From positions 4,340,001 to 4,404,000 of the forward strand of contig JAWMAR010000070.1 in NCBI GenBank assembly GCA_036785375.1: 64,000 nt of DNA. Direction: 5' to 3'. This document shows, in pieces, positions 4,155 through 64,000 of the stretch. The position numbers and the translations under genes are program-made. The notes beneath the pieces were generated by a model. It did not search any database, was not told the origin of the DNA, and saw only the letters and a program-made list of their open reading frames with translations. How positions within the stretch are numbered: the first letter of the stretch is position 1; the number at the start of each line of letters is the position of its first letter. Source of the DNA: Leucoraja ocellata (lineage: Eukaryota).

Positions 4155-4245
4155 CTTAGAGCCTCTTGTGAGCACCGCGGTTGAGATACTCCAGATCACA
4201 AGCAGGAGAAAGAACATCCAGCGCCCCACTTCCCATGAGATGTAA
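4155..4245 (-). CDS. Gene C transmembrane exon with Arg (YISWEVGRWMFFLLLVIWSISTAVLTRGSK)
   Basis: tatttcttgccctttgcccag acceptor, TAAG|GTAGGT donor; hydrophobic segment; protein identical in gene B. Confidence 0.8.
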
Positions 4246-4313
4246 CTGGGCAAAGGGCAAGAAATACGGAGTCAATGGGAGGAAACGAGACGGTTAATCT
4301 TTGAAGCATTTAC

Positions 4314-4379
4314 CTGTTATTTGCTTCATAATCTTGGTGAAGAGGAGCGCGGCGAAGCGGCAGCGTCAGTGGAGACCAT
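4314..4379 (-). CDS. Gene C 66-nt stalk exon (WSPLTLPLRRAPLHQDYEANNS)
   Basis: Phase 2-2; the other two frames contain stops; 68-nt intron to the TM exon. Confidence 0.55.
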
Positions 4380-5871
4380 CTTTGTAAAAGAACGGGTGTT
4401 GGACTGGGGGGAGGCGGGGGGGGGGGGGGGGGGACAACATATGACAACCAATTGTTTACCTCATTGCTGGGGCATGGCTACAAGACTGGGAATGAGAGAC
4501 TACGCGGTTAAATGGATTCAGAGAATACAGATAAATAAGTCATGAGTTGGGACAGTGAATACAAAACAGATGGACACAAAATGTTGGAGAAACACAGCGG
4601 GAGAGGCAGCATCTCTCTGGAGAGAAGGAATGCGTGAAGTTCCGGGTCGAGACCCTTCTTCAGACCGAGAGTCACGGGAGAGGGAACTGTGGATGTGGAA
4701 GGATACAAAGAACCCTGGAAGAAAGAAAATGCAGCTGCAAGGAAGATTATAATAAAATCATTTTGGATAGACAGGAATAATAAAAACGGATCAATTCCAA
4801 TAATGGAAGGGAGATGAGGCAATAAAAATGGAAACAGATGAGGCCAATTAATAAAGTTAATTAAAAAATGATTTTACTTAATCTCACACCCTGGATACTT
4901 CGTGGATCAACGCGGTAGGTGTGTGGATGGAGGAATTGTGCTCGAAAAATCGGTTAAAGGTTCGCTCATAACGGAGTGGCTTTCATGAACATTTGCTAAC
5001 GCAAGTATAACACAAGAGTGTGATAGAAAGTCAGATCTATTTGAATTGTGAGAAGATAAACAACAAAACGTTCCCACTTTCATGACTATATTATGATTGA
5101 ATATTTAATGGTTTCAAGTATCAACGAGTAAGAGAGAGTCAGTTAACTCATTTTGCTGTATTCGGATGAGGTGAGTGATGTAGCAATCATGTTGAATACT
5201 GCAGGGAGCGCTCTCTGAAAAGCATCAAATGGAGGAACTTGTTCTTATCATCCAAGCATGTACACAACACAATGAGATGTAAACCAGTGCGATTCCCATT
5301 CTGATAAGTTAACTAATAACTGGTTTGTAAGGTATATTTATTGTATTAAATAATATTTAATAGATACGTTTATATTTGGTGTCAGGCTTGAAACTTGTAC
5401 AACAATTGGTTATGCTTCATGACATTTAGGTTCATTGGATCAAAGACCCATAGAGAAACACAGGCCGTTCCGTCAACTGCATTCACATGATTCCTGTGTC
5501 AATCCTATTTTTATTTCCCCCACTTGCTCATCAACTACCACCCCCACCCCCACCCCCACCCCACCAATTCTTCACAGATTCAGCCACTCTCCTGTACACA
5601 TGGGGCAATTTACAACTGGCTCGTCTTTGGGAGCTGGGAGGAAACTGGAGCACTTGAATGAAACCAACACAATTAAAGGCAAAACATGCAGACCACGCAC
5701 AGACAGCTCCTAATGAACCAATGTCGTGGCGTTGTGAGACTGTGGTTCAACACTCTCACGCATTTAATGCCAGTGAAGAGAAGGCACAACTTTCTCCCAA
5801 TTAAAGCATTCCCCAATCAAAACACCAGCAATTAGTACATTGTAACTTTCATTGGAAACAGAGCATTTTAC

Positions 5872-5920
5872 CTTGCAGAGTAATTGGATGGTATCGAATT
5901 TTCACAATAATATTCAAGAC
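5872..5920 (-). CDS. Gene C 49-nt Cys linker exon (GLEYYCENSIPSNYSAR)
   Basis: ttccttgttccaacag acceptor, CAAG|GTAAAA donor, phase 1 to 2. Confidence 0.78.
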
Positions 5921-6116
5921 CTGTTGGAACAAGGAAATAAAAGTCAGTTTCACTGCTTTTCACTTGCAGTTGAACAAGTAGCTATGATTTTCCGATGCAA
6001 GGAGTTGATAGGCTTAACAGACAGGGCAATGCTTCTTCTGTGTGATTTGCAGCAAATGGGAGATGTTATCATGACAAGCAAGCGTGCTGGTAACAACTCT
6101 GGCTCCAGGTGTAGAT

Positions 6117-6310
6117 GGCACGGTGGCGCAGCGGTAGAGTTGCTGCCTTACAGCCAGAGGCACGGGTTCGATCCTGACCACGGATGCTGTCTGCACGGAA
6201 TTTGTAACTCCTCCCTGTGACCGCGTGGGGTTTCTCCAAGTTCTCCGGTTTCCCCACAGTCTGAACTCTTGCAAGTGTGTTGGTTAATTGGCTTCTGTAA
6301 ATTGTAAATT
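6117..6310 (+). mobile_element. tRNA-derived SINE (HE1/V-SINE-like); related copies at ~1660-1940(-), 19020-19300(-), 23460-23720, 45820-46010, 48600-48870(-), 50866-51065
   Basis: GGCACGGTGGCGCAGCGGTAGAGTTGCTGCC A-box and GGTTCGATCC B-box; (AGTTT)n tails on several copies. Confidence 0.7.
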
Positions 6311-6462
6311 GGGGTTATGGGGAGAAGGCAGGAGAATGGGGTGAAGAGGGGAAGATACACCAGCCATGATTGAATGGTCTATATCTGCTTCTATCACATG
6401 TGATTTTATGAACCACCCCACCCCCACTTCCCCTTCTTCTCCCCATCCCCTTCACTACTTAC

Positions 6463-6783
6463 CAGTGCCGTTGATTTTCACCAGGAAACTGCAGGACACG
6501 TCATTGCTGGAGATGGACACGTTGACCATTTCACTGGATTTTGATCCACGTTGATTTGAGGCTGTGCAATAATATTGATGGTGCTGGTGTTTGAAGGATT
6601 GACAATGTAGATCCAGGGCATTGTTGTCTGAGATCTTTGAATCCCCAGATGGGGTCTTTTCATACCAGGTGTAGTTAATGGGAAGCGATCCCCAGACCGA
6701 CTCACAGGACACTGTCACTGAGCCCCCGAGACAATAGACATTGGCTGGTGACAGACACCCGAGCACAGGAACAGACACGGGTT
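6463..6783 (-). CDS. Gene C C2b exon
   Basis: 321 nt, ACTG|GTAAGT donor. Confidence 0.88.
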
Positions 6784-7689: not shown

Positions 7690-8380
7690 AAATTTAATAA
7701 ATATTTTTATTTGAATCAATGTACAGTAGTATAAACCGTGTTTTACATATTACATTTAGTGTAAAACTTCTTGTTTTTAATTTATTAATAGAAAAGTAAC
7801 AGAAGCAAAAATGAGAAGGAGAGAGAAAGTTAAGTAGTGATATTGATAGTTCGTGAAAGAATAGATAGAAAGAACCCGTAAAGATATAAAGTCGTAAAAA
7901 ATCCGTGACCCCCCCTCCCCCCGAAAATTAAATACATTAATTAGTAAATAGAAATAAAAAATAGAAAATAAAATAAAATAATAAGAAAACAAAACAGAAA
8001 AAGAATAAAAGGGAGAAGGGATATACCTGCTTCATGTCTTTCCACACCCCTCGCCTAGTTCTGAAACAGTTAATTTCCAGGGTTATGTTGCACCATGTAC
8101 TTGGAATAAGTCGATAAAAGGAGACCAAATCTTTAGGAATTGGTCTGCTTTACATGCTAGGACGAATCTTATATCTTCGAGGTGTAACATTTCAGACATG
8201 CTTGAAATCCACATTTTACGCGTGGGGGTGGGTTCGTTGTTCAAGAATTTGAGTATACGTTTTTTTGCTGTTATCAAGCCGTGGTTAAGGAGAGAATTTT
8301 GGAACGAAATCAGCTTAGAGCCGGCTTCCATTGTTCCAAAAATAATCAATTCAGTGTTGGGGTCCAATTTTATTTTAAAC
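7690..8380 (-). mobile_element. L1/Tx1-like LINE 3' fragment (copies at ~25780-26450 and ~53210-55610, the latter interrupted by CR1)
   Basis: LIIFG...LITAKKRILK...FLKIWSPFI C-terminal signature; AT-rich 3' tail. Confidence 0.65.
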
Positions 8381-9093
8381 TCGCGTGATTTTTTTACCTG
8401 CAATAAAATCACCCCTCATCCTCCTGCGCTCCAAGGAATAAAGCCCTAATCTGCGCAACCCCTCCCTGTATAGCAGGCCCTCAAGTCATCGCAACATTCT
8501 TGTAAGTCTTCCCTGCTCCTTCTCCTCACAATCAATTTACCAGATTTATACATCTCTGTGTCTCTCCATTCTCCCAGCCGCCAGAACTACCATGTCTGGC
8601 ACTGGACCAGTACACAGCAGCACCATCTCTCTTTGTTTTACAATTCCAGCATCTGCAGTTAATCTTCTTTTAATCTGAAACTCTGCTTTTAATCTGAACA
8701 TTCAAACACTTCATTAGTGCAACAGTATCAACAACTTTTTAATTTCCTTGCATAAAATTGTTGATAGTGATAATGTTGCACAAATGAGGTGTGTGAATGG
8801 CGGTATTGTAGAATTGTGTGTAGGGAGCGAATGGGGAAGTGGAATAATATAAAACTAGTGTGACCGGTGATCGCTAGTTGGTGAGGATTCGGTGGGCCGA
8901 AGGATCCGTTTCCATGTTACATTTGTAAACTATTACTAAATATCCGGGTGAACATGTTTCTGTAAACTCTACAAACCGTTCACATCTTTTGTTTTATAAA
9001 GCGGCGACCAGACCTGTGCACCAGACTCCCACCTAACAAATGTTTTGCCCGTTGCCTAAGTGGAGACATCAAGTCACTCACTGAGAAACCTAC

Positions 9094-9405
9094 CTTCAGA
9101 TACTTGGAGATATACTTTAAATGTTGGTTCGCCAGGTGTAGTAATTCCACATCTGTACCATCCTGTATCAGCAGAGTGAAGATCCTCCACGGTCACAGTA
9201 AATATTCCTCGTGCCGGGTTATCTGTGATTGACACTGTTCCGTTCAGTCCACGTTTCCCATTTGTTTCCACTACATGTGTACACTGGCGACTTGTCCCAC
9301 GGCACCAGTATTTTGTGTGTGAGCGGTACACTGCTGCATAGTGACAATCGATTGTGATCGCTCTTCCCACAACCCCTCTTACTTCGCTCTCTGCCCACAG
9401 TGCAC
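9094..9405 (-). CDS. Gene C Ig V exon 4
   Basis: 312 nt; KYWCRGTSRQC, DTGWYRC. Confidence 0.9.
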
Positions 9406-10480
9406 CTGAAACTGAAGGAAACATCTTTCATAAATTGAAGAGCAAAATTACCCTTTCACAAACATATACATTAGAGTATAATGTACAGGGGAGTCTGCCC
9501 ACTTATTTTCTGAACTCTGTTGAATTCCACCTAGATTGCGATGAGAGACAGATACTGTACACCGTCCCTCACCATCTGCACAGGTCGTTCCAAAGCGCTT
9601 CCCAGCCAATGTGGGTGTGAATGGTGAAGAATGATGCATTGAACACGGAGCCTCTTGCAATTGGAAGGCGCTGTCTAGGGAGTCTTGGTCAGTTGCTGCA
9701 GTGCATCGTGCAGATGGTGCAAACTTCTGCTGCTCTGCATCAGCGGGGGGGGTTGAGGATGGGGTGTCTATCATGCGCGATTCTGGGTCATGACAAACCA
9801 AACACAAGTGTTCGGCGAAATTGTAGCATAGGCCAGTGCTTCTTAAACTGATGAATGGTTCACCCAAGGGCGAATAAAATTATTTTGGCGTAAATTAGTT
9901 AATTTATGTTTTTTGCTCATGTGACAAAACCAATTATCTATAAAATTATGCACAAGGGAAAATGCGATGATAATAACCAAAAGAACATAAGAACATTTAG
10001 TGGAGGGTTAATTAAATCTTGTAATAAAGACTCAAGGGCGAATGACACTGTAATAGTTTAAGAAGAACTGGCCTTGTATAAAATTGGTCTCGCTGATGTA
10101 AAACATTCACACTCTCTTCTGGACTTCCAATATGAGCGTCTCCACACCTACAGGGAAGTTCTTTTCAAAATTATCTTTGACAAAAGTAAGGGTTATACTT
10201 GATGGAGTGACGGCCAAGTAGATTCCAATTTAATTTTGTGAGATTACTGGAGTTTTACACAAATTAACATAGTTAAAATCATGAACATGATCATGAAATT
10301 GTACATCATTGGTTATAACTGATGATGGATCCAAACAGAATGAATTTGGTTTCTTTCTCTGTCTCAAAGTGCGGCAGCCAGAAAATAATGTTGATGGAAT
10401 GAACTGAACCCGCAGGTATTTCTCTCATTTGCTGAGATTTCTCACCAGCTCCCAGGTGAAAGACACAGGCAATCATTTAC

Positions 10481-10543
10481 CAGTCCCCCAAACAAATTCT
10501 CGCATTTTACACCATGAGCTCCCGGTGGCTGCAATGATGCCGT
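10481..10543 (-). CDS. Gene C 63-nt Cys linker exon (DGIIAATGSSWCKMREFVWGT)
   Basis: tttgcag acceptor, ACTG|GTAAAT donor, phase 1-1. Confidence 0.65.
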
Positions 10544-10625
10544 CTGCAAATAACAAGAAATCCATGAACATCACCTCAAGGCGAATGAATAGCAGCAGGT
10601 TCAGGGACACGAGAAGAACACTCAC

Positions 10626-10946
10626 CTGCATTGTTGATTTCTGTCACATAACTGCACGTTCCTGCTCCTTTGAAGACTTTCACGTTGAATATTTCACTGG
10701 ATTTTATCCCACGATTATTTGAGGCTGTGCAGTAATATTGACGATGTTGGCCTTCGAGGATTTCACAACTCAGATCCAGTTGATTGCCAGACAAGATCGT
10801 TAAAGACCCATCCTCGTTCTTCTCAAACCATGTGTAATTGATGGGAAAGGATCCACGGACAGACTCACACGACACTGACACTGAGCCTCCGAGACGTGAG
10901 GCATTTGCTGGTGACAGATATCTGAGCACAGGAGCAGACATGGGTT
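10626..10946 (-). CDS. Gene C C2a exon
   Basis: 321 nt, GCAG|GTGAGT donor. Confidence 0.88.
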
Positions 10947-12442: not shown

Positions 12443-12757
12443 CGTCAGATACTTGGAGATGTACGTTAAATATTGGACGGTCGCCAGGTGTAGTAATTCC
12501 ACATCTGTACCATCCTGTATCTCCAGAGTGAAGATCCTCCACAGTCACAGCAAATATTCTTAGTGCCGGTATATCTGTGATTGACACTCTTCCACTCCGT
12601 CCGTTTTGGCCATTTGTTTCCACTGAATCTGTACATGGGCGATTCCTCCCACGGCACCAGTATTTTGTGCGTGAGCGGTACTCTGCTGCATAGTGACAAT
12701 CGATTGTGATCGCACTTCCCACAACCCCTCTTACTTCCCTCTCTGCCCACACTGCAT
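12443..12757 (-). CDS. Gene C Ig V exon 3
   Basis: 315 nt; KYWCRGRNRPC. Confidence 0.9.
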
Positions 12758-13377: not shown

Positions 13378-13692
13378 CGTCAGATACAAGGAGTTCTACG
13401 GTAAACATTGGGAGGCCGTTAGATGTTGTAATTCCACATCTGTACCACCCTGTATCGCCAGAGAGAAGATCCTCCACAGTCACAGTAAATATTCCTCGTG
13501 CCCGGTTATCTGTGATTGACACTCTTCCACTCCTTCCGCGTAGCCCAATTGTTTCCACCATATCTGTACATTGGCGATTCTGCACACGGCACCAGTATTT
13601 TGTGTGTAAGCGGTACTCTGCTGCATAGTGACAATCGATTGTAATCGCACTTCCCACAACCCCTCTTACATACGTCTCTCCCCACACTGCAC
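13378..13692 (-). CDS. Gene C Ig V exon 2
   Basis: 315 nt; KYWCRVQNRQC. Confidence 0.9.
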
Positions 13693-14301: not shown

Positions 14302-14616
14302 CGTCAGATACTTCGAGATGAACGTTAAATATTGGATGGTCGGCAGATGTTGTAATTCCACATCTGTACCATCCTGTATCTCCATCCTGAAGATCGTCAA
14401 CAGTCACAGTAAATATTCCTCGTGCCGGGTTATCTGTGATTGACACTCTTCCACTCCGTCCGTGTTGCTCATTTGTTTCCACCAAAACTGTACATTGGAG
14501 ACTCCTCCCACGGCACCAGTATTTTGTGTGTGAGTGGTACTCTGCTGCATAGTAACAATCGATTGTGGTCGCTGTTCCCACAACTCCTCTTACATCCCAC
14601 TTTGCCCACAGTGCAC
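14302..14616 (-). CDS. Gene C Ig V exon 1
   Basis: 315 nt, phase 1-1; KYWCRGRSLQC, DTGWYRC. Confidence 0.9.
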
Positions 14617-15359: not shown

Positions 15360-15360
<1 letters not shown>

Positions 15361-16887: not shown

Positions 16888-16924
16888 CCGGCAGCGAGGC
16901 GATGAGAAGAATGGGAATCCACAT
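16888..16924 (-). CDS. Gene C signal peptide exon (MWIPILLIASLP; alternative in-frame ATG at 16936)
   Basis: Hydrophobic leader, CCGG|GTGAGT donor; the 16924 ATG is the one conserved in gene B. Confidence 0.85.
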
Positions 16925-17039
16925 TGTTTTATCCATAGTGACAAGGCCAGCACTTGTCTGTCTGTCGCTCAGCCCTGAGCTTTCAGAGACAACCGCGTCT
17001 CTCAAATAGCAATGACTTAGAAGGGAACAGGACGTCAGA

Positions 17040-20100: not shown

Positions 20101-21511
20101 TGTCAGTGTGGGAATGGGAGGGAGGAGTTACCGTGTTTAGCGACCGGGATATCAGGTAGGGGCGGACTCAACGGAGGTGTTCAGCAAAACGATCGCCGAG
20201 AAGCGAGAACAATCGCAGGCTCAGCAATCGTTTCGCTGAACACCGCCCCCCAGTCTGCCTACCCCTACCTGATCTATCTACTGATACCGCCTGCCACGCT
20301 AAGTTACCCCAGCAATTTATGTCTATCTTCAGTTTAAACCAGCATCTACAGTTCCTTCCTACCTAAAAATTAGTTGCATATCGGCAATGAAATCTGTACA
20401 TGTTGGATGTGCTTAGCGCGTCAGTCAGTGTCTGTGCAGAGAAAAATAAGGTTAATAGTCAGAACAATGCTGTTGCATAATTTTGGTCTGATGGGATAGC
20501 ACAGTCTGAAAGATTAATTGAATGCCTTCCCTAATCGCCTTTAATGTTTGGCAACAAGAGGAATATCCAGCAGTCTAATCAAAACAAATTAGACAAACCG
20601 TTTATTGACAACAACCATTTATTAAGAAGCATTCTGTTGCATTATTATTCATTAATCTGTGAAAAAAAATCCAGGAAATTGTATGCATATAATATAGTTT
20701 AACGGAGGATAAAACTCTGAAGCAGCAGAAACCACGCAAAGGTTAAAACAATAGTTCGAAGCTGACGAAAGAAACCTTGGAAGAGGTGGCAAAAATTAAG
20801 ATGGTGCAAGCTAGGAGTCTTCATTGTAATTCGTGGGTCGAGTGGCGAGGTTCTGAGTCATCGCGTCTCTGCAAAAGACAATGTGAAGTCATCAGACAGA
20901 CTGACAGTGGGAACCACGCTTTATTTGTCCCGGCCACTCCCAACACATTGCTGTCTGCAAAATGCTAATCCACGAATTAGTTAATCCAATGCCAACGAAC
21001 CCACACCGGGCACAGAAATCCACCCTGCACGCGTACAACCTGACAGAACCTCGTGATATCATCTACATAGAGATTTGGTTTAACCTCAGGATATGAAAAC
21101 GTGCACGATTTTTGTTTCTATCGATGGACAGGATATATGAAAGCATTAATGGAAACCGTTTGGAAACACTCGGCAAAGAGAAGGGATTGCTTTGGGCGAA
21201 TCCCTTCTGGTGAATCTATGGATTTCATTGCCACAGGAGGCTGTGGGTGCCAAGTTAATTCACACCGGAGATGCTGCCTGTCCCGCTGAGCTACTCCAGC
21301 ATTTTGGTATCTGTCCAAATTAATTGATGCTTTAAGGCGGAGATTTTCATTTTCTTGATAAATAAGGATGTCAATGGTTACGGGGAGAAGGCAGGTGAAT
21401 GGGATCGAGTGAAGGATAGATCAGCCGTGATTGGGGGCCGATTAGATATGATGGGCTGAATGGCCTAATTCTGCTCCTATAATTTATGAACATGATGACA
21501 ATAAAACCTAC

Positions 21512-21602
21512 CTTAGAGCCTCTTGTGAGCACCGCGGTTGAGATACTCCAGATCACAAGCAGGAGAAAGAACATCCAGCGCCCCACTTCCCATGAGATGT
21601 AA
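21512..21602 (-). CDS. Gene B transmembrane exon with Arg (YISWEVGRWMFFLLLVIWSISTAVLTRGSK)
   Basis: tttgcccag acceptor, TAAG|GTAGGT donor, phase 2 to 0. Confidence 0.8.
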
Positions 21603-23216: not shown

Positions 23217-23265
23217 CTTGCAGAGTAATTGGATGGTATCGAATTTTCACAATAACATTCAAGAC
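23217..23265 (-). CDS. Gene B 49-nt Cys linker exon (GLECYCENSIPSNYSAR)
   Basis: ccaacag acceptor, CAAG|GTAAAA donor, phase 1 to 2. Confidence 0.75.
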
Positions 23266-24547: not shown

Positions 24548-24868
24548 CAGTGCCGTTGATTTTCACCAGGAAACTGCAGGGCACGTCACTGCTGGAGATG
24601 GACACGTTGACCATTTCACTGGATTTTGATCCATGTTGATTTGAAGCTGTGCAGAAATATTGATGGTGCTGGTGTTTGAAGGATTGACAATGTAGATCCA
24701 GGGCATTGTTGTCTGAGATCTTTGAATCCCCAGATGGGGTCTTTTTATACCAGCTGTAGTTAATGGGAAGGGATCCCTGGACCGACTCACAGGACACTGT
24801 CACTGAGCCCCCGAGACAAGAGACATTGGCTGGTGACAGACACCCAAGCACAGGAACAGACACGGGTT
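24548..24868 (-). CDS. Gene B C2b exon
   Basis: 321 nt, canonical splice sites. Confidence 0.85.
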
Positions 24869-27174: not shown

Positions 27175-27478
27175 CATCAGATACTTGGAGATGTACTTTA
27201 AACGCCAGGTGTAGTAATTCCACAGCTGTACCATCCTGTATCTCCAGAGTTAAGATCCTCCACAGTCACAGTAAATATTCCTCGTGCCGGGTTATCTGAC
27301 ATTGACACTCTTCCACTCTGCCCACGTTCCCTATTTGTTTCCACTGCATGTGTACACTGGCGACTTGTCCCGTTGCACCAGTATTTTGTGAGTGAGCGGT
27401 ACACTGCTGGATAGTGACACTCGATTGTGATCGCTCGTCCCACAACCCCGTGTACTTCGCTCTCTGCCCGCTGTGCAC
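27175..27478 (-). pseudogene. Gene B V4-type exon with 8-bp deletion and premature stop
   Basis: 304 nt versus 312 in paralogs; plus-strand tgttggtt is missing near 27202; reads ...GITTPGV*. Confidence 0.85.
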
Positions 27479-28722: not shown

Positions 28723-29043
28723 CTGCATTGTTGATTTCTGTCACATAACTGCACGTTCCTGCTCCTTTCAAGACTTTCACGTTGAGACTTTCACTGGATT
28801 TTGTCCCATGATTATTTGAGGCTGTGCAGTAATATTGACGGTGTTGCCCTCCGAGGATTTCACAACTCAGATCCAGTTGATTGCCATACACGGTAGTTGA
28901 AACCCAATGCTCGTTCATCTCAAACCATGTGTAACGGATGGGAAGGGATCCACGGACAGACTCACACGACACTGACACTGAGCCTCCGAGACGTGAGGCA
29001 TTTGCTGGTGACAGATATCTGAGCACAGGAGCAGACACGGGTT
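28723..29043 (-). CDS. Gene B C2a-type exon
   Basis: 321 nt, GCAG|GTGAGT donor. Confidence 0.85.
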
Positions 29044-30189: not shown

Positions 30190-30504
30190 CGTCAGATACT
30201 TGGAGATGTACGGAAAATATTGGATGGGCGGCAGATGTTCTAATTCCACAGATGTATCTTCCTGTATCTCCAGAGTGAAGATCCTCCACAGTCACAGTAA
30301 ATATGCTTAGTGCCGGTATATCTGTGATGGACACTCTTCCATTCCGTCCGTGTTGCCCATTTGTTTCCACCATATCTGTACATTGGCGACTCCACCCACG
30401 GCACCAGTATTTTGTGTGTGAGCGGTACTCTGTTGCATAGTGACAATCGATTGTGATCGCTCTTCCCACATCTCCTGTTACATTCTTCTTCCCCCAAACT
30501 GCAA
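30190..30504 (-). CDS. Gene B Ig V exon (V3-like)
   Basis: 315 nt, atttcag|TTGCA acceptor, GACG|GTACGT donor; KYWCRGWSRQC, DTGRYIC. Confidence 0.85.
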
Positions 30505-31600: not shown

Positions 31601-31921
31601 CAGTGCCGTTGATTTTCACCAGGACACTGCAGGGCACGTCACTGCTGAAGATGGACATGTTGACCATTTCACTGGATTTTGATCCATGTTGATTTGAGGC
31701 TGTGCAATAATATTGATGGTGCTGGTGTTTGAAGGATTGACAATGTAGATCCAGGGCATTGTTGTCTGAGATCTTTGAATCCCCAGATGGGGTATTTTCA
31801 TACCAGCTGTAGTTAATGGGAAGGGATCCCCAGACCGACTCACAGGACACTGTCACTGAGCCCCCGAGACAAGAGACATTGGCTGGTGACAGAAACCCAA
31901 GCACAGGAACAGACACGGGTT
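31601..31921 (-). CDS. Gene B extra C2b-type exon (inserted module)
   Basis: 321-nt open exon with canonical sites, near-identical to 24548..24868. Confidence 0.82.
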
Positions 31922-34064: not shown

Positions 34065-34379
34065 CGTCAGATACTTCGAAATAAACGTTAAATATTGGAT
34101 GGTCGGCAGATGTTGTAATTCCACATCTGTACCATCCTGTATCTCCATCCTGAAGATCGTCCACAGTCACAGTAAATATTCCTCGTGCCGGGTTTTCTGT
34201 GATTGACGCTATTCCACTCCGTCCGTGTTGTCCATTTGTTTCCACCAAAACTGTACATTGGAGACTCCTCCCACGGCACCAGTATTTTGTGTGTGAGCGG
34301 TACTCTGCTGCATAGTGACAATCGATTGTGATCGCTCTTCCCACAACTCCTCTTACATCCCTCTTTGCCCACACTGCTC
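34065..34379 (-). CDS. Gene B Ig V exon (V1-type)
   Basis: 315 nt, phase 1-1; KYWCRGRSLQC, DTGWYRC. Confidence 0.88.
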
Positions 34380-35952: not shown

Positions 35953-35989
35953 CCGGCAGCGAGGAGATGAGAAGAATGGGAATCCACAT
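35953..35989 (-). CDS. Gene B signal peptide exon (MWIPILLISSLP)
   Basis: ATG at 35989, hydrophobic core, CCGG|GTGAGT phase-1 donor. Confidence 0.85.
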
Positions 35990-36099
35990 TGTTTTATCCA
36001 CAGTGACAAAACCAGCACTTGTCTGTCTGTCGCTCAGCTCTGAGCTCTCAGATACAATCTCAAATAGCAATTACAAGAAGGGAACAGGACGTGAGATCC

Positions 36100-39312: not shown

Positions 39313-39624
39313 CTTCAGATACTTGGAGATGTTCTTGAAATGTTGGTTCGCCAGGTGTAGTAAGTCCACAGCTGTATCGTCCTGTATCTCCAGAGTGAAG
39401 ATCCTCCACAGTCACAGTAAATATTCCTCGTGCCGGGTTATCTGTGATTGACACTCTTCCGCTCTGTCCATGTTTCCCATTTGTTTCCACTACATGTGTA
39501 CACTGGCGACTTGTCCCAGGGCACCAGTATTTTGTGTGTGAGCGGTACACTGCTGCATAGTGACAATCGATTGTGATCGCTCTTCCCACAACCCCTCTTA
39601 CATCACTCTCAGCCCACAGTGCAC
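39313..39624 (-). pseudogene. Orphan intact Ig V exon (V4-type), relic gene fragment
   Basis: 312-nt open exon with intact splice sites and all four Cys; flanks (~39190-40290) match the V4 introns; no leader, C2 or TM exon found nearby. Confidence 0.7.
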
Positions 39625-45416: not shown

Positions 45417-45683
45417 CTAAGAAACGACAGAGGCATAGGTTGACTCAGTGTTCTCTGGAGTCACAGTAGAGTGGGGTTTCCGAATGCCCTTTGGGCAGTT
45501 GCGGTGAAAATTGACATCTGCGTACACGACAGCGTTTTCAGCCGCATGCTGCCTTGATCTTGACTTCCTTTGACAATTCACCACTGCATACGTGATTCCA
45601 CCTTCATTGTTGGCCAAATGGTCACCTGCCCTGTTGTTTTCCAGATTTGAATCAATGTGGTTCCCTTCCAACACTGCCATTTC
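45417..45683 (-). CDS. Gene A terminal cytoplasmic exon with 3 ITIMs (ITYAVV, VVYADV, STYASV)
   Basis: atttcag|GAAATG acceptor, phase 0; ORF 45417..45680 ends in a stop; three (I/V/S)xYxxV motifs. Confidence 0.88.
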   Translation of the reverse strand, partial: EMAVLEGNHIDSNLENNRAGDHLANNEGGITYAVVNCQRKSRSRQHAAENAVVYADVNFHRNCPKGIRKPHSTVTPENTESTYASVVS

Positions 45684-46105: not shown

Positions 46106-46152
46106 CTGGGTTTCATCGTTGTCTTCACCGTGTGATGTATTGTACTTGGATT
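46106..46152 (-). CDS. Gene A cytoplasmic exon 1 (ESKYNTSHGEDNDETQ)
   Basis: ttttccag acceptor, CCAG|GTAACA donor, phase 1 to 0, matching both neighbouring exons. Confidence 0.75.
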
Positions 46153-48126: not shown

Positions 48127-48215
48127 CCTTGGTTTTACGCTTTCGGTACCAAAAGAAGGCAATGATGAGAATCAGGAAAAGCACAGTGACACCAGACGCA
48201 ACTATGTAAATGATC
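48127..48215 (-). CDS. Gene A transmembrane exon, uncharged (IIYIVASGVTVLFLILIIAFFWYRKRKTK)
   Basis: Polypyrimidine tract plus caacag acceptor, AAGG|GTGAGT donor, phase 2 to 1; hydrophobic run followed by basic stop-transfer RKRK. Confidence 0.88.
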
Positions 48216-50643: not shown

Positions 50644-50692
50644 CTTGATAAAGCATTGGATCCTTTCGAAGTTTCACAAGAATATTCAAGTC
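50644..50692 (-). CDS. Gene A 49-nt Cys linker exon (GLEYSCETSKGSNALSR)
   Basis: ttccttgttcacacag acceptor, CAAG|GTAAAC donor, phase 1 to 2, bridging C2b (phase 1) to the TM exon (phase 2); homologs in B and C. Confidence 0.8.
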
Positions 50693-51952: not shown

Positions 51953-52273
51953 CAGTGCCGTTGAATTTCACCAGGAAACTGCAGGGCACGTCACTGCTGG
52001 TGATGGACACGTTGACCATTTCACTGGATTTTGATCCTTTATTATTTGAGGCTGTGCAATAATATTGATGGTGCTGGTGTTTGAAGGATTGACAATGTAG
52101 ATCCAGGGCATTGTTGTCTGAGATCTTTGAATCCCCAGATGGGGTCTTTTCATACCAAGTGTAGTTAATGGGAAGCGATCCCCGGACCGACTCACAAGAC
52201 ACTGTCACTGAGCCCCCGAAACAGGAGACATCGGCTGGTGACAGACACCCAAGCACAGGAACAGACACGTGTT
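51953..52273 (-). CDS. Gene A Ig C2-type exon (C2b)
   Basis: 321 nt, cccacag acceptor, ACTG|GTAAGT donor; VSCESVRGSLPINYTWY...YYCTASN. Confidence 0.88.
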
Positions 52274-56328: not shown

Positions 56329-56640
56329 CTTCAGATACTTGGAGATATACTTTAAATGTTGGTTCGCCAGGTGTAGTAATTCCACATCTGTACCATCCTG
56401 TATCTCCAGAGTGAAGATCCTCCACGGTCACAGTAAATATTCCTCGTGCCGGGTTATCTGTGATTGACACTCTTCCGCTCTGTCCATGTTTCCCATTTGT
56501 TTCACCTACATGTGTACACTGGCGACTTGTCCCAGGGCACCAGTATTTTGTGTGTGAGCGGTACACTGCTGCATAGTGACAATCGATTGTGATCGCTCTT
56601 CCCACAACCCCTCTTACTTCGCTCTCCGCCCACAGTGCAC
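56329..56640 (-). CDS. Gene A Ig V exon 4
   Basis: 312 nt, phase 1-1, GAAG|GTAGGT donor; KYWCPGTSRQC, DTGWYRC. Confidence 0.9.
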
Positions 56641-57716: not shown

Positions 57717-57779
57717 CAGTCCCCCAAACAAATTCTCTCATTTTACACCATGAGCTCCCGGTGGCTGCAATGATGCCGT
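57717..57779 (-). CDS. Gene A 63-nt Cys linker exon (DGIIAATGSSWCKMREFVWGT)
   Basis: ttatttgcag acceptor, ACTG|GTAAAT donor, phase 1-1; conserved in gene C. Confidence 0.65.
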
Positions 57780-57857
57780 CTGCAAATAACAAGAAATCCA
57801 TGAACATCATCACAAGGCGAATAGCAGCAGGTTCAGGGACACGAGAAGAACACACAC

Positions 57858-58178
57858 CTGCATTGTTGATTTCTGTCACATAACTGCACGTTCCTGCTCC
57901 TTTGAAGACTTTCACGTTGAGTATTTCACTGGATTTTGTCCCACGATTATTTGAGGCTGTGCAGTAATATTGACGGTGTTGACCTTCGAGGATTTCACAA
58001 CTCAGATCCAGTTGATTGCCAGACACGGTAGTTGAAACCCAATGCTCGTTCTTTTCAAACCATGTGTAATGGATGGGAAGGGATCCACGGACTGACTCAC
58101 ACGACACTGACACTGAGCCTCCGAGATGTGAGGCATTTGCTGGTGACAGATATCTGAGCACAGGAACAGACATGGGTT
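57858..58178 (-). CDS. Gene A Ig C2-type exon (C2a, FcR/FCRL-like)
   Basis: cccacag|AACCC acceptor, GCAG|GTGTGT donor, 321 nt; VSCESVRGSLPIHYTWF...YYCTASN. Confidence 0.88.
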
Positions 58179-59674: not shown

Positions 59675-59989
59675 CGTCAGATACTTGGAGATGTACGTTA
59701 AATATTGGACGGTCGCCAGGTGTAGTAATTCCACAGCTGTACCATCCCGTATCTCCAGAGTGAAGATCCTCCACAGTCACAGCAAATATTCTTAGTGCCG
59801 GTATATCTGTGATTGACACTCTTCCACTCCGTCCGTGTTGCCTATTTGCTTCCACTAAAACTGTACACGGGTGATTCCTCCCACGGCACCAGTATTTTGT
59901 GTGTGAGCGGTACGCTGCTGCATAGTGACAATCGATTGTGATCGCTCTTCCCACAACTCCTGTTACATTCTTCTCTGCCCACACTGCAT
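59675..59989 (-). CDS. Gene A Ig V exon 3
   Basis: 315 nt, tttcag|ATGCA acceptor, GACG|GTACGT donor; KYWCRGRNHPC, DTGWYSC. Confidence 0.9.
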
Positions 59990-60997
59990 CTGAAACTGAG
60001 GGGAGAAACTTTCAGATGGACCAGTTGACCAGGGAGTGACGGAGGGAACGGTGTCTTCGGAAAGCGGTGGAGATGGAAAGGTGTGGCTAGTTATCTGGTT
60101 ATGGGATCCCGTTGGAGGTGGCGAAAACGTTGGACGATTATATGTTGCGTGCGACGGCTGATGGGGTGAAAGATGAGTTTATTCTGCTTACCACCGGGGA
60201 AATGTCCGGGTGGAGAGGCTGCCGGGCGGTGGGTGGACAGTGGCTGTTGGGGGTGGGGGCCCATTGACGGGGCAGAGGGAGAGAGAGAGCGAGAGCGCGG
60301 GATGGGGAGGGAATGACTGATCGCTGAGGTGGGAGCGGGAAGCGGTATGAACTGCACCGGGAGGACTGATGAGCTCTGGGGACTGATATTTTTTTTTAAC
60401 TCTCCGGGTATTCAGACCGCGAGCAACACTTGTTTCTCACTGTGGGATTATTAGTTTGAGTCTGAATGCAAACTTCTGACGGGTGACATTTCATACAGTT
60501 CCGAGGAAGGGAAATGCGCTGAGTGAAAAGTGAAGTGAAAGTGAAGTTAAATCCCACTTTTCAAGAAAGGAGCGAGAGAAAACAGGAAATTACAGAGCAG
60601 TTAGCCTGACTTCGGTGCGGGAAAGATGCCGGAGTCAATTATTAAAGAGGTAATAATGGGGCATTTGGATAGCAGTAAAATAATTAGTCCAAGTCAGCAT
60701 GGATTTATGAAAGGAAAATCATGCCTGACTAATCTTCTGGAATTTTTTGAGGATGTGGCAAATAAAATGAACGAAGGTGAGCCAGTGAATGTAGTGTGTC
60801 TAGACTTCAAGAAATCCTTTGATAAGGTTCCGCACGGCAGACTGGTGACTAAATTGAGAGCGCATGGAAGGGTGTTGACGTGGATAGGAAATTGGTTGGC
60901 AGACAGGAAGCAAAGAGTAGGAGTGAACGGGTCCTTTTCAGAATGGCGGGAAGTGGCGAGTCAGTGGAGACGACAAGTCAATCGTTGCGAAACGTAC

Positions 60998-61312
60998 CGT
61001 CAGATACAAGGAGTTCTACGGTAAACATTGGGCGGCCGTTAGATGTTGCAATTCCACATCTGTACCATCCTGTATCGCCAGAGAGAAGATCCTCCACAGT
61101 CACAGTAAATTTTCCTCGTGCCGGGTTATCTGTGATTGACACTCTTCCACTCCTTCCGGGTAGCCCAATTGTTTCCACCATATCTGTACATTGGCGATTC
61201 TGCACACGGCACCAGTATTTTGTGTGTGAGCGGTACTCTGCTGCATAGTGACAATCGATTGTAATCACACTTCCCACAACTCCTCTTACATACATCTCTC
61301 CCCACACTGCAC
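60998..61312 (-). CDS. Gene A Ig V exon 2
   Basis: 315 nt, phase 1-1, canonical splice sites; KYWCRVQNRQC, DTGWYRC. Confidence 0.9.
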
Positions 61313-61430
61313 CTGAAACTGAAGGGGAGAAACTTTCAGATGGAGAGCAAATGAACAGTTTAGTGGAAATAGATACATTTTCAAGATTCCATGAAAGAAA
61401 ACTTAAATAGTTCCATGATGTGTCATATTG

Positions 61431-61768
61431 TACAGGAGGTACAAGGAGCATTAGCTGCAAAACCAGCAGGATGCTCCTCAGCTTCTTCCCACAGGCTATA
61501 AGACTGTTAAATGAACTTTCCCCCCTGCCAAGTATCGCGCACAAACCCCCCACACTGCAGCAGAGCCACTGTTGTGCCGCTGCCGGTCGGAACGGCTGTT
61601 GAATGTTTATTAGAGGGTTAAATTTGTTCATGACATGTATTTTTTAATTTTAATTCCTATTTATTTTGTAATGGAAACTGAATGGACACTGGTTGAGCAA
61701 CGTTTTTTTGTTTCCTCTGGGTATGCGAATACTCAGGAAATGACAATAAAGATTTACAATATATTACA
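61431..61768 (+). mobile_element. Rex/Babar-like LINE 3' fragment specific to gene A
   Basis: RSISCKTSRMLLSFFPQAIRLLN; atattg target-site duplication (61425-30 and 61769-74); empty site at ~13805. Confidence 0.7.
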
Positions 61769-62265
61769 ATATTGCTTCACGGCCAATGTCTCTGGTCTGA
61801 AGTGCAGGCAGTGCTGTTATTGTACCAGTTGTGTCAGTGTTCTGTCCCCGGGTCAGTACAATTAGGGTTCACTTCCTACTCCAGATCCCTGAGCAGAAAC
61901 TGGGCTGGGATCGCAGTGCGGTACTGAGGGAGCGCGGCAGTGTTGCAGGAGCTGCCTTTCAACGATCCCAGGCGGTGCCTGGCCTCTCACCCCACGAAAG
62001 ACCCCACTTTGCTATTTCATTGGCGGTGACAATTTCTTCACAGCAGTTATCAGGCATCTGAATCATCCTACCACGCCCAGAGATCTGTCCTGAACTCCCA
62101 TCTACCTCTTTGACGACCCTCGGACCACCCTTGATCGTACTTTGCTGCCTTTACCTTACACTAAACGTTATTTAATTTTCAATTATATATGCACTGTAGG
62201 AGAATCGATTGTAATCCTGTATTGTCTTTCTGCTGGAGACGTCAATCAATCGCTGCGAAACGTAC

Positions 62266-62580
62266 CGTCAGATACTTCGAGATGAACGTTAAATATTGGA
62301 TGGTCGGCAGATGTCTTAATTCCACATCTGTACCATCCTGTATCTCCATCCTGAAGATCGTCCACAGTCACAGTAAATATTCCTCGTGCCGGGTTATCTG
62401 TGATTGACAATCTTCCACTCCGTTCGTGTTGCTCATTTGTTTCCACCAAAACTGTACATTGGAGACTCATCCCACGGCACCAGTATTTTGTGTGTGAGCG
62501 GTACTCTGCTGCATAGTAACAATCGATTATGGTCGCTGTTCCCACAACTCCTCTTACATCCCGCTTTGCCCACACTGCAC
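62266..62580 (-). CDS. Gene A Ig V exon 1 (CD300/pIgR-type)
   Basis: tttcag|GTGCA acceptor, GACG|GTACGT donor, 315 nt, phase 1-1; IDC...KYWCRGMSLQC...DTGWYRC. Confidence 0.9.
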
Positions 62581-62656
62581 CTGAAACTGAGCGGAGAAAC
62601 TTTCAGATGGAGAGCAATGAACTGTTTAATGGAAATAGATACATTTTGAAGATTAC

Positions 62657-63262
62657 TTCTTCATATAAACTTCTTCATCGCCTCCAATGCATTCAGAACT
62701 CAGCAGCCCGGATCATCACCCGTACCAGATCATCGGACCACATCACACCCATCCTCGCTCAGCTCCACTGGCTCCCTGTGCACCACCGGATTAACTACAA
62801 GATTTTACTGCTGACCTTAAAAGACCTACCGCACCTTGCTCCCCAATACCTCTCTGACTTGCTGCTACCATACACTCCTTCCCGGTCACTTCGTTCCTCC
62901 TCAGCTGTAACTTTAACTGTCCCCACATTTAGACTCAGCACAATGGTTGCCAGAGCCTTTGGCTGCTCTACCCCACGTCTCTGGAACACTCTCCCACCTC
63001 CCTTCCGTCACCTAGGCACTATCGATCAATTCAAATCACAAATCAAAACACACCTGTTTAGATTAGCATACCCGACATAACTTCCACAATGTTCACCCTG
63101 ATTTTAATGACTTAAAATATTTTGTGTATTTTTTTGTTTTTTGTTTTTTGGCAACTTAATTTTAATATTGATAATTGTATTGTGATTTTATGTCCTGTAA
63201 GGTGTCCTTGCGTGTCCAGAGAGGCGCTAGCAAATAAAATGCATTATTATTATTAATATTAA

Positions 63263-63329
<67 letters not shown>

Positions 63330-63330
63330 T
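62657..63330 (+). mobile_element. L2-clade LINE 3' fragment with (TTA)n tail, at the same site as in gene C
   Basis: ORF 62529..63080 is nearly identical to 14565..15116. Confidence 0.82.
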
Positions 63331-64000
63331 GAAAGAAAACTTAAATCGTTCCATGATGTGTCATATTGCTTCACGGCCAATGTCTCCGGCCTGAAGTGCA
63401 GGCAGTGCTGTTATTGTACCAGTTGTGTCAGTGTTCTGTCCCCGGTTCAGTACAATTTGGGTTCACTTCCCACTCCAGATCCCAGAGCAGAAACTGGGCT
63501 GGGATCGCAGTGCGGTACTGAGGGAGCGCGGCAGTGTTGCAGGAGCTGCCTTTCAACAATCCCAGGCGGTGCCCGGCCTCTCACCCCACAGAAAGACCCC
63601 ACTTTGCTATTTAATTGGCGGTGCCGCCGGCTACGCTGCCAACATTCATCTCTCAACCGACACTGGGCAGGACGCGTGTTTTTTTAAATTATCAAATAAT
63701 TTATTCAATTATTAAAAATAATATTTACACTACAATAAAACAAGAACCCAACACCATAATACAAGACAAACAAATATACTAAATAAACTACTATACAACT
63801 ATGTTACAATACTTGTCAAGGGTGTATTCAACCACAGGCGGTGCCCAGATGTCCCGGAAATCCCCCAGATGCCCGTGGACAGCGCCTGGTCCTTCTCGAG
63901 ACCCACCCGGACGCGGAAAGCCGACCCGTGTTTAGACATTCACCGCCGCCAATGCTTTCCAACGCCCTGACTGAGGACAGAGGACGGACGAGATACATTA

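What the first reader, a model, noticed from the sequence alone, without database searches (positions are those of the whole stretch)
4155..64000. Paired inhibitory/activating receptor system: one six-Ig ectodomain wired to opposite signalling modules
Seen: genes A and C share the same V-V-V-C2-linker-V-C2-linker ectodomain, nearly identical even in introns. Homology breaks just 3' of the 49-nt linker exon (~50460 vs ~5720). A continues into an uncharged TM and a tail with three ITIMs. C and B continue into a stalk and an unrelated TM with an Arg near its outer end. Established: ITIM versus charged-TM pairs with shared ectodomains define paired receptor families (LILR/PIR, CD300, KIR, SIRP), and an outer-TM Arg recruits FcR-gamma in LILRA, OSCAR and GPVI. 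Inference: this is a chondrichthyan paired-receptor locus whose activating copies act as counterparts or decoys of the inhibitory gene.
Basis: partly seen in the sequence, partly recalled or inferred. Interest (0 to 1): 0.9.

Follow-up and report, generated by a model that had tools for sequence, protein, structure and literature searches.

The report
Skate MDIR inhibitory/activating-type receptor gene cluster
Three neighbouring skate immune-receptor genes share almost the same six-domain outer part but end either in an inhibitory tail or in a short membrane anchor with a conserved arginine, and they belong to the MDIR family already cloned from another skate in 2006.

Summary
The described sequence features are present. 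Three minus-strand genes carry pIgR/CD300-type V exons and FCRL-like C2 exons.

- **Shared ectodomain:** genes A and C share V-V-V-C2-V-C2, at 95.2% identity in exons and 93.8% in introns.
- **Homology break:** colinear homology ends about 200 nt 3' of the 49-nt exon.
- **Gene A:** it continues in frame into an uncharged TM and a tail whose three tyrosines all sit in ITIMs.
- **Genes C and B:** they continue into a TM beginning VGRW and a 15-residue tail.

This is not a new kind. Gene A matches skate MDIR3 and genes C/B match MDIR5. Those two cDNAs already share an ectodomain at 81% identity.

Across 135 relatives, Arg-Trp TMs and ITIM tails exclude each other except in fused models. The Arg is invariant in 48 of 48 TM segments.

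- The "linker" after C2a and the "stalk" have no homolog support.
- Gene B carries disabling deletions.
- Four RNA runs gave no reads on the C/B exons.
- Adaptor coupling is untested.

The parts
62266..62580 (-). Gene A V1 exon (pIgR/CD300-type V). Gene A's leader lies beyond the window end.
60998..61312 (-). Gene A V2 exon
59675..59989 (-). Gene A V3 exon
57858..58178 (-). Gene A C2a exon (FCRL-like C2)
57717..57779 (-). Gene A 63-nt exon-like piece after C2a. It has splice sites and phase 1-1, but no homolog contains it, so its use is doubtful.
56329..56640 (-). Gene A V4 exon
51953..52273 (-). Gene A C2b exon (membrane-proximal C2)
50644..50692 (-). Gene A 49-nt exon (LEYSCETSKGSNALS), phase 1->2. 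It is 93% identical to Amblyraja ITIM-type models.
48127..48215 (-). Gene A TM exon, uncharged, followed by the RKRKTK stop-transfer; phase 2->1
46106..46152 (-). Gene A 47-nt cytoplasmic exon (SKYNTSHGEDNDETQ), phase 1->0
45417..45683 (-). Gene A last coding exon with the stop codon. ITIMs lie at 45579-45596 (ITYAVV), 45513-45530 (VVYADV) and 45426-45443 (STYASV).
39313..39624 (-). Orphan V4-like exon between genes A and B. It has an intact frame and splice sites and is 94% identical to gene C V4. It lies upstream of gene B's leader, so it belongs to no gene model.
35953..36001 (-). Gene B leader exon. The first ATG is GTG here; the second in-frame ATG is intact.
34065..34379 (-). Gene B V1-like exon
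31601..31921 (-). Gene B extra C2b-type exon, sitting between V1 and the V3-like exon
30190..30504 (-). Gene B V3-like exon
28723..29043 (-). Gene B C2a exon
27177..27478 (-). Gene B V4 exon with a 10-nt deletion that brings an in-frame stop (…GITTPGV*)
24548..24868 (-). Gene B C2b exon
23217..23265 (-). Gene B 49-nt exon (LECYCENSIPSNYSA)
21512..21602 (-). Gene B TM exon, 100% identical to gene C's. The Arg codon is at 21578-21580.
20821..20868 (-). Gene B terminal coding exon RRDDSEPRHSTHELQ*
16888..16936 (-). Gene C leader exon (MDKTMWIPILLIASLP), phase 0->1
14302..14616 (-). Gene C V1 exon. A second acceptor 6 nt upstream would give the VSG junction seen in the MDIR cDNAs.
13378..13692 (-). 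Gene C V2 exon
12443..12757 (-). Gene C V3 exon
10626..10946 (-). Gene C C2a exon
10481..10543 (-). Gene C 63-nt exon-like piece (GIIAATGSSWCKMREFVWGT), unsupported by homologs
9094..9405 (-). Gene C V4 exon
6463..6783 (-). Gene C C2b exon
5872..5920 (-). Gene C 49-nt exon (LEYYCENSIPSNYSA), 71% identical to MDIR5
4314..4403 (-). 90-nt 'stalk' candidate, phase 2->2. It has no counterpart in 250 homologs and zero RNA depth, so it is probably not an exon.
4155..4245 (-). Gene C TM exon YISWEVGRWMFFLLLVIWSISTAVLTRGSK, with the Arg codon at 4221-4223. It is 87% identical to the MDIR5 TM.
3462..3509 (-). Gene C terminal coding exon RRDDTEPRHSTHELQ*

Best explanation
The window holds part of a tandem array of MDIR (modular domain immune-type receptor) genes of a rajid skate.

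**Gene A** is an MDIR3-type inhibitory receptor. It has six Ig domains (three pIgR/CD300-type V, one FCRL-like C2, one V, one C2), a short Cys-bearing 49-nt exon, an uncharged TM and a tail with three ITIMs spaced 22 and 29 residues apart. By inference, the phosphorylated ITIMs recruit SHP-type phosphatases.

**Gene C**, and the damaged gene B, are MDIR5-type. They carry the same ectodomain joined through their own version of the 49-nt exon directly to a TM that starts W-x-V-G-R-W-x-x-F, followed by a 20-residue Tyr-free tail.

The ectodomain has been copied or converted between the two gene types. The two 3' modules are old and unrelated. By inference, the invariant Arg at the outer end of the TM pairs with an acidic TM residue of a dimeric ITAM adaptor of the zeta/gamma type. 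That would make C the activating counterpart of A.

Shown: gene structure, family membership, module exclusivity, and mixing of ectodomains across tail types. Inferred: signalling polarity, adaptor, ligand sharing, expression.
For: **Exon chains**
- The chains close in frame in both gene types.
- MDIR3 (P0166, 701 aa) matches gene A exon by exon: V4 88%, C2b 81%, TM 82%, tail 77%.
- Leucoraja P0153 matches gene A more closely: TM 97% by blastp-short, tail 81%.
- MDIR5 (P0186) matches the gene C/B module: 49-nt exon 71%, TM 87%, terminal exon 79%.

**Pairing in the public record**
- MDIR3 and MDIR5 are 81% identical (377/463) through the ectodomain. Similarity stops at the TM.

**Family-wide pattern among 135 relatives**
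- 35 have the Arg-Trp TM, a tail shorter than 60 residues and no ITIM.
- 41 have at least 2 ITIM-like motifs and no Arg-Trp TM.
- 7 have both. Five of these are fused models with 557-816 residues after the TM. Two have a single motif in a 35-48-residue tail.
- 52 are unclassified.

**TM conservation**
- In 48 TM segments, R8, W9 and F12 are invariant at 48/48 and W4 at 47/47, while neighbouring positions vary.

**Ectodomain mixing**
- On the C2b tree of 26 rows, tail type needs 8 changes, against a shuffled mean of 7.5.
- Mixed-tail clades occur in Rhinoraja (94/94), Rostroraja (83/74) and Pristis (100/98).

**Both ectodomains are kept open**
- A versus C shows 0 frameshifting indels in 1899 exon nt.
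- The introns show 13 in 6239 nt, which predicts 3.96 for the exons (P=0.019).

**Separate genes**
- Each tail module exon occurs only in its own gene(s) in the window.
Against: - **No RNA support.** Four RNA runs (X7, X10, X13, X14, tissues unknown, labelled organism B while the DNA holders are organism A) gave zero depth on the C/B terminal exon, on the bin holding the 5' part of the TM exon and the 90-nt candidate, and on the 49-nt exon. Depth on C2b was at most 0.8. Only repeats were covered.
- **Position of the Arg.** It sits at the very first positions of the hydrophobic stretch, preceded by G/V and a variable polar residue. It could therefore be interfacial rather than buried.
- **Original description.** As I recall the abstract of Cannon et al. 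2006 (paper not held), MDIR5 was described as lacking characteristic activating or inhibitory motifs, and MDIR1 as the form with a charged TM residue.
- **Adaptor availability.** PMC4016189 (passages read) reports that the FcR gamma chain was not found in cartilaginous fish in 2014.
- **Selection.** dN/dS between A and C is 0.93 (64 nonsynonymous, 21 synonymous changes). This also fits relaxed constraint.
- **Gene B.** It has an 11-nt deletion and a lost GT in the 63-nt piece, a 10-nt deletion with a stop in V4, and ATG->GTG at the first start codon.
Confidence: 0.6

Rival explanations
1. The Arg-Trp TM genes (C, B, MDIR5-type) are non-signalling membrane forms, acting as decoys or sinks. The Arg is an interfacial snorkelling residue and no adaptor is bound. 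They would compete with the inhibitory form for ligand without activating the cell.
For: - The Arg lies at the extreme outer edge of the hydrophobic stretch.
- The tail has no Tyr and no known motif.
- By my recollection of the 2006 abstract, MDIR5 was classed as lacking signalling motifs (paper not held).
- FcR gamma was reported absent from cartilaginous fish (PMC4016189, passages).
Against: - R8 and W9 (48/48), W4 (47/47) and F12 (48/48) are invariant across sharks, rays and skates, while flanking positions vary. W4, R8 and F12 fall on one helix face at i, i+4, i+8. Such conservation is more than an anchor needs.
- The module strictly excludes ITIM tails in unfused models.
Confidence: 0.22
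2. Genes C and B are decaying duplicates (pseudogenes or unexpressed copies) of a functional MDIR5-type gene elsewhere in the array. Only gene A and other copies matter.
For: - Gene B has three lesions.
- There were no RNA reads on the C/B 3' exons in four runs.
- dN/dS between A and C is 0.93, and nonsynonymous divergence equals the intron-level divergence of about 4-5%.
Against: - Gene C keeps every exon open with intact AG/GT borders and consistent phases.
- A versus C shows 0 frameshifting indels in 1899 exon nt where 3.96 are expected from the introns (P=0.019).
- Gene B's damaged exons are phase 1-1, so they could be skipped without breaking the frame.
- The tissues of the RNA runs are unknown, and only 5-32% of each run was read.
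Confidence: 0.15
3. One gene makes both forms by alternative 3' splicing, rather than separate paired genes.
For: Nothing specific. This was considered only because the ectodomains are so alike.
Against: - The ITIM tail, the 47-nt exon and the uncharged TM exon occur once each in the window, all 3' of gene A.
- The Arg TM exon occurs only 3' of genes B and C.
- Each ectodomain copy has its own module within 2-7 kb. The next gene's leader follows at 16936 (after B) and 36001 (after A's intergenic stretch).
Confidence: 0.02

Closest known systems
MDIR3 and MDIR5 of the clearnose skate (Rostroraja/Raja eglanteria), found here as UniRef entries P0166 and P0186
   Same: - They use the same domain types in the same order (V…C2a-V4-C2b), the same 49-nt-exon peptide, and the same two C-terminal modules.
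- MDIR3 matches gene A at 77-88% per exon.
- MDIR5 matches the gene C/B TM at 87% and the terminal exon at 79%.
- MDIR3 and MDIR5 share an ectodomain at 81% identity and diverge at the TM.
   Different: - The species differs.
- Genes A and C have three N-terminal V domains, against two in MDIR3 and one in MDIR5.
- This window adds the genomic picture: tandem genes, intron-level identity, and the break point 3' of the 49-nt exon.
- Whether the 2006 paper read MDIR5 as activating could not be checked, because the paper is not held. I recall that it did not.
Mammalian CD300A/CD300C, and other paired receptors: LILRB/LILRA, PIR-B/PIR-A, KIR, SIRP
   Same: - They are neighbouring genes with near-identical ectodomains, one ITIM-tailed and one with a charged TM residue and a short tail.
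- The CD300-type V fold matches: CLM-1/CD300 chains score E 2e-17 against V1.
- CD300A/C are called a paired system in the abstract of PMC12447643 (search listing).
   Different: - CD300 proteins have a single V domain. Here there are six domains, mixing V with FCRL-like C2.
- The TM motif W-x-V-G-R-W-x-x-F is the family's own.
- Adaptor use, ligands and opposite signalling are shown for the mammalian pairs (established knowledge) but not here.
Polymeric Ig receptor (pIgR)
   Same: It is the best solved-structure match of the V exons: 7jg2_E scores E 1.2e-50 over several domains, with the CxY…YWC…DTGxYxC pattern. NCBI names most relatives 'pIgR-like'.
   Different: - pIgR has only V-type domains and a long tail without ITIMs (established knowledge).
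- Here C2 domains are interleaved, and the tails are either ITIM-bearing or short.
FCRL5 / Fc receptor-like proteins
   Same: The C2b exon's best solved-structure match is FCRL5 (9loc_A, E 4.6e-37). FCRLs also come with ITIM or ITAM-like tails (established knowledge).
   Different: FCRLs lack pIgR/CD300-type V domains.

Membership tests
MDIR (modular domain immune-type receptors of skate) | Close sequence kinship to the named MDIR cDNAs over ectodomain and C-terminal modules | tested here: met
   - P0166 (MDIR3) matches gene A exons at 77-88%.
- P0186 (MDIR5) matches the gene C/B TM at 87%, the terminal exon at 79% and the 49-nt exon at 71%.
- The names come from UniRef.
MDIR (modular domain immune-type receptors of skate) | Ectodomain built from a variable number of Ig modules resembling CD300/pIgR/TREM and FcR homologs | tested here: met
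   - Pfam finds V-set x4 and Ig_2/Ig_3 x2 in gene C.
- PDB matches are pIgR, CD300, NKp44 and TREM2 for V, and FCRL5 for C2.
- Domain number varies: six in A and C, a different set in B, and 4-5 in MDIR5 and MDIR3.
- The feature list is taken from passages of PMC3031540 and from my recollection of the 2006 abstract.
MDIR (modular domain immune-type receptors of skate) | Multigene family with ITIM-bearing members and members without ITIM | tested here: met
   The window holds three genes plus an orphan exon. Gene A has 3 ITIMs; C and B have none. Among 135 relatives, 41 are ITIM-type and 35 Arg-Trp-TM-type.
Paired activating/inhibitory receptors (functional class) | Neighbouring genes with near-identical ectodomains | tested here: met
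   A versus C exons are 95.2% identical and introns 93.8%. Per exon, 87-93% of residues are identical.
Paired activating/inhibitory receptors (functional class) | Inhibitory partner carries ITIMs that bind SHP phosphatases | not testable with these tools
   The motifs are present: ITYAVV, VVYADV, STYASV. They are conserved in MDIR3 and in skate models. Binding was not tested.
Paired activating/inhibitory receptors (functional class) | Activating partner has a basic TM residue that binds an ITAM adaptor | tested here: inconclusive
   An Arg is present and invariant in 48 of 48 segments, but it sits at the outer edge of the hydrophobic stretch. No adaptor could be searched for or tested. PMC4016189 reports FcR gamma absent in cartilaginous fish.
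Paired activating/inhibitory receptors (functional class) | Both partners expressed, on the same or related cells | tested here: inconclusive
   Four RNA runs gave zero depth on the C/B 3' exons.
Paired activating/inhibitory receptors (functional class) | Shared ligand | not testable with these tools
   No ligand data exist. A and C differ at 59 of 627 aligned residues of the six Ig exons.
CD300 family | Single V-type Ig domain ectodomain | tested here: not met
   There are six Ig domains including two C2. Only the V fold type is shared.
pIgR | All-V ectodomain (4-5 domains) and a transcytosis tail without ITIMs | tested here: not met
   C2 exons are interleaved, and the tails are ITIM-bearing or 20 residues long. 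The defining features are recalled from established knowledge.

The most novel reading that the evidence does not exclude
The W-x-V-G-R-W-x-x-F transmembrane module may be a pan-elasmobranch adaptor-coupling device. It occurs in skates, rays, sawfish, and carcharhiniform, orectolobiform, lamniform and pristiophoriform sharks.

If so, MDIR5-type receptors, which as I recall were originally described as lacking signalling motifs, are the activating halves of true paired receptors. Their ectodomains would be repeatedly exchanged with ITIM-bearing neighbours in each lineage.

That would place the full paired-receptor logic, including concerted evolution of ectodomains, at or before the elasmobranch radiation. 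It would also require a zeta/gamma-type adaptor partner in cartilaginous fish, against the 2014 report that FcR gamma is missing there.
Probability: 0.45. Interest if true: 0.55.

Novelty: new member of a known kind. Interest (0 to 1): 0.3.

Why it matters
The window gives a gene-level view of how a cartilaginous-fish immune receptor family keeps one ligand-binding part on two opposite or different membrane modules.

- The break point is mapped to within about 100 nt.
- The ectodomains evolve at roughly the neutral rate yet stay open.
- The same mixing of tail types recurs in other skates and in a sawfish.

It also yields a concrete, testable hypothesis for an invariant TM arginine in a lineage where the usual adaptor has been reported missing. 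The V and C2 domains match pIgR (E 1.2e-50) and FCRL5 (E 4.6e-37) clearly. This contradicts the published statement that nothing resembling pIgR or FcRL exists in cartilaginous fish. For a specialist the family itself is not a surprise, since it was cloned in 2006.

Tried and rejected
- **RNA evidence.** Reads fell only on repeats (2043-2404, 2948-3128, 3853-4214, 4577-4757, 6025-6386), on both strands, and 65-95% ran on into unlike sequence. This gives no exon support.
- **The 63-nt 'linker' and 90-nt 'stalk' as real exons.** Both are rejected as unsupported. The best matches among 250 proteins had E 0.8-1.9 and were chance hits.
- **Alternative splicing of one gene.** Rejected.
- **Arg-TM module in other families or taxa.** I searched with residues 215-264 of P0019. 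Only 5 candidates and 3 hits came back, all Rhinoraja, so the search says nothing either way.
- **MDIR1.** It did not appear, so its charged TM could not be compared.
- **Literature.**
  - Searches found only PMC3031540 mentioning MDIRs.
  - Cannon et al. 2006 (PMC3701310) and the 2010 review (PMC2823954) are not held.
  -, on adaptors in sharks, gave nothing relevant.
  - Any statement that the pairing has not been discussed in print therefore rests only on these searches of the held library.
  - Supplements were not opened. Those of PMC4016189 may list which cartilaginous-fish genomes were screened.
- **Earlier scan notes on ITAM adaptors in this genome.** They gave no adaptor gene.
- **C2b tree.** I used only five species lists. 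From 37 candidate proteins I kept the C2 domains that are followed by an Arg-Trp TM or an ITIM tail: 22 database rows plus 4 window rows. Left out were internal C2 domains and proteins that failed my length or label filter, among them P0152, P0003, P0206, P0050, P0230, P0242, P0174, P0154, P0004 and P0168. The tree has 106 columns, 12 of its 22 inner branches are open, and the bootstrap had not settled.

Full report
**What is in the window**

The 64-kb window has no N. It contains large internal duplications at 90-96% identity: 1-6305 with 17340-23650, 8269-12791 with 55504-60023, and 13805-16029 with 61769-63996, among others.

All long Ig-like ORFs lie on the minus strand. Pfam scores them as V-set (E 1.7e-13 to 2.7e-10) or Ig_2/Ig_3.

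Against solved structures, V1 of gene C is closest to pIgR (7jg2_E, E 1.2e-50 summed; domain 1 scores 55 bits). Next come CD300/CLM chains (2e-17), NKp44, FcmuR and TREM2. The C2b exon is closest to FCRL5 (E 4.6e-37).

**Gene models**

These were read from the sequence, exon by exon.

Gene C consists of:
- leader 16888-16936
- V1 14302-14616, V2 13378-13692, V3 12443-12757
- C2a 10626-10946, V4 9094-9405, C2b 6463-6783
- a 49-nt exon at 5872-5920
- TM exon 4155-4245
- terminal exon 3462-3509 (RRDDTEPRHSTHELQ*)

Gene A has the same Ig exons at 62266-62580, 60998-61312, 59675-59989, 57858-58178, 56329-56640 and 51953-52273. Its leader is beyond the window. It continues with:
- a 49-nt exon at 50644-50692
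- TM exon 48127-48215
- a 47-nt exon at 46106-46152
- tail exon 45417-45683

All borders are AG/GT. The phases close: Ig exons 1-1, 49-nt exon 1->2, A's TM 2->1, A's 47-nt exon 1->0, and C's TM 2->0.

The gene A tail has three Tyr, at residues 32, 54 and 83. All three lie in (S/I/V)xYxxV motifs. The gene C/B TM reads YISWEVGRWMFFLLLVIWSISTAVLTRGSK, and the tail has no Tyr.

A and C exons are 95.2% identical (97 mismatches in 2010 positions). Introns are 93.8% identical (412 in 6686); most introns are 94-98% identical, apart from large insertions such as a LINE with a 427-aa RVT_1 ORF at 54176-55459.

Identity is lower 3' of C2b: the intron there is 72.5% and the 49-nt exon 75%. Colinear homology stops at C 5664 / A 50410. 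Beyond that, only dispersed repeats match.

There are therefore two boundaries:
- a recent one near the end of C2b;
- an old one about 200 nt 3' of the 49-nt exon.

Each 49-nt exon resembles its own tail type in other skates. A's is 93% identical to Amblyraja ITIM-type models, and C's is 71% identical to MDIR5.

A 63-nt piece after C2a (10481-10543 in C, 57717-57779 in A) and a 90-nt piece before the TM (4314-4403) have good splice sites and compatible phases. Neither peptide matches any of 250 related proteins; the best E-values are 0.8-1.9.

The MDIR3 and MDIR5 sequences pass from C2a straight into V4. The 'VSG' junction there shows use of an acceptor 6 nt upstream of the V exon starts given here. 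They also pass from the 49-nt exon straight into the TM.

Gene B is not an equal copy. Its layout is leader, V1, an extra C2b, a V3-like exon, C2a, V4, C2b. Its lesions are:
- The 63-nt piece has an 11-nt deletion and GT->GC at the donor.
- V4 has a 10-nt deletion that creates a stop.
- The first ATG is GTG.

Because the Ig exons are phase 1-1, skipping the damaged exons would keep the frame. This is inference.

**Family**

A profile-free scan of 1.84 billion representatives with the gene A C2b exon found 1009 proteins at E<=0.001. The closest, at 56-78% identity, are from cartilaginous fishes.

Searches with two of them (P0002, P0019) returned 87 and 39 proteins. They come from skates, rays, sawfish, sharks and one chimaera, and most are named 'pIgR-like' or 'Fc receptor-like' by NCBI. 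Among them are UniRef's Modular domain immune-type receptor 2, 3 and 5 of Rostroraja eglanteria.

- MDIR3 matches gene A throughout, including the TM (82%) and the ITIM tail (77%).
- Leucoraja P0153 is about 90% identical to gene A.
- MDIR5 carries the gene C/B module.
- MDIR3 and MDIR5 are 81% identical over 463 ectodomain residues and unrelated after the 49-nt exon.

The pair 'one ectodomain, two C-terminal modules' is thus already in the public sequence record.

[quoted passage not shown] The original paper is not held. I recall from its abstract that MDIR1 has a charged TM residue, MDIR2 and MDIR3 have ITIMs, and MDIR4 and MDIR5 lack characteristic motifs.

**How it probably works**

The 135 relatives divide as follows:
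- 35 have the Arg-Trp TM with a short ITIM-free tail.
- 41 have at least 2 ITIM-like motifs and no such TM.
- 7 have both. Five of these are evident fusions of neighbouring genes, and two have one chance-level motif.
- 52 are fragments or unclassified.

In 48 TM segments, R8, W9 and F12 (48/48) and W4 (47/47) never vary, while positions 5, 7, 10, 13 and 16 do. The hits were found by similarity to the query, so this is partly circular. W4, R8 and F12 are spaced i, i+4, i+8, which puts them on one helix face.

By analogy with basic TM residues that dock onto the paired Asp of zeta/gamma/DAP12 dimers (established knowledge), I infer adaptor coupling. The outer-leaflet position favours a zeta/gamma-type partner. 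CD3-zeta should exist wherever TCRs do (established knowledge). FcR gamma itself was reported as not found in cartilaginous fish in 2014 (PMC4016189, passages).

Gene A's ITIM spacing of 22 and 29 residues fits tandem-SH2 phosphatases. This too is inference.

**Evolution**

On a tree of 26 membrane-proximal C2 domains, tail type is not clustered at all. It needs 8 changes against a shuffled mean of 7.5, and 404-409 of 500 shuffles are as low. Arg-TM and ITIM forms pair within Rhinoraja, Rostroraja and Pristis.

This fits repeated exchange of ectodomains between the two gene types, or repeated swapping of tails. The tree is short and weakly resolved.

Within the window, dN/dS between A and C is 0.93 (V exons 1.11, C2 exons 0.84; 64 nonsynonymous and 21 synonymous changes). 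Yet no frameshifting indel occurs in 1899 exon nt, where the intron rate predicts 3.96 (P=0.019). Both ectodomains seem to be kept open while their residues change freely, as in other paired receptors. Relaxed constraint is not excluded.

**Against**

The only expression test was negative or uninformative. Adaptor, phosphatase and ligand binding are all untested. The Arg could be merely interfacial.

**Verdict**

The system is a new member of a known family (MDIR), not a new kind.

Noticed in passing
window 39313-39624 (-), within 39198-40066: A solitary V4-type exon with an intact frame and AG/GT borders, 94% identical to gene C V4. It sits in the A-B intergenic stretch, upstream of gene B's leader, and looks like the relic of a lost gene copy.
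   Followed up: partly
window 361-1190, 17721-18550, 36971-37812: An ~840-bp block (87-88% identical) lies about 0.8-1 kb upstream of the leaders of genes C and B, and occurs again at the window start. This suggests a shared promoter-proximal region and a further gene just beyond coordinate 1.
   Followed up: no
window 27177-27478, 28593-28644, 35999-36001: Gene B lesions: a 10-nt deletion with a stop in V4; an 11-nt deletion plus a GT->GC donor in the 63-nt piece; and the first start codon ATG->GTG.
   Followed up: yes
window 6463-6510 plus 5872-5920 (and 51953-52000 plus 50644-50692): The end of the C2b exon and the 49-nt exon together read …VSCSFLVKINGTG-LEYYCENS…, with two Cys 16 residues apart. 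This may be a small disulfide-closed membrane-proximal loop. C2a ends with the same single Cys (GTCSYVTEINNA), whose only nearby partner Cys would lie in the unsupported 63-nt piece.
   Followed up: no
window 14617-14622, 12758-12763, 9406-9411: There are tandem acceptors 6 nt apart (…cag tttcag|) at V1, V3 and V4. The MDIR cDNAs show the upstream one in use ('VSG' junction). V2 of gene C has 'cac' at the upstream site and can use only the downstream one.
   Followed up: partly
window 2043-2404, 2948-3128, 3853-4214, 4577-4757, 6025-6386: Dispersed repeats are covered by RNA reads at depths of tens to thousands on both strands in all four runs, with most reads running on into unlike sequence. 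These are expressed repeat copies from elsewhere, not transcription of this locus.
   Followed up: partly
window 54176-55459 (-), 46867-47328 (-), 13006-13404 (+), 60626-61024 (+): There are LINE reverse-transcriptase ORFs or fragments in the introns and between the exons of genes A and C. The 427-aa ORF scores RVT_1 at E 1.9e-30, and it accounts for the ~1.7-kb size difference of the V4-C2b intron between A and C.
   Followed up: partly
literature versus window (V exons, C2 exons): PMC4016189 states that nothing clearly similar to pIgR or FcRL was found in cartilaginous fish. Here, V exons match pIgR D1 and C2 exons match FCRL5 strongly.
   Followed up: partly
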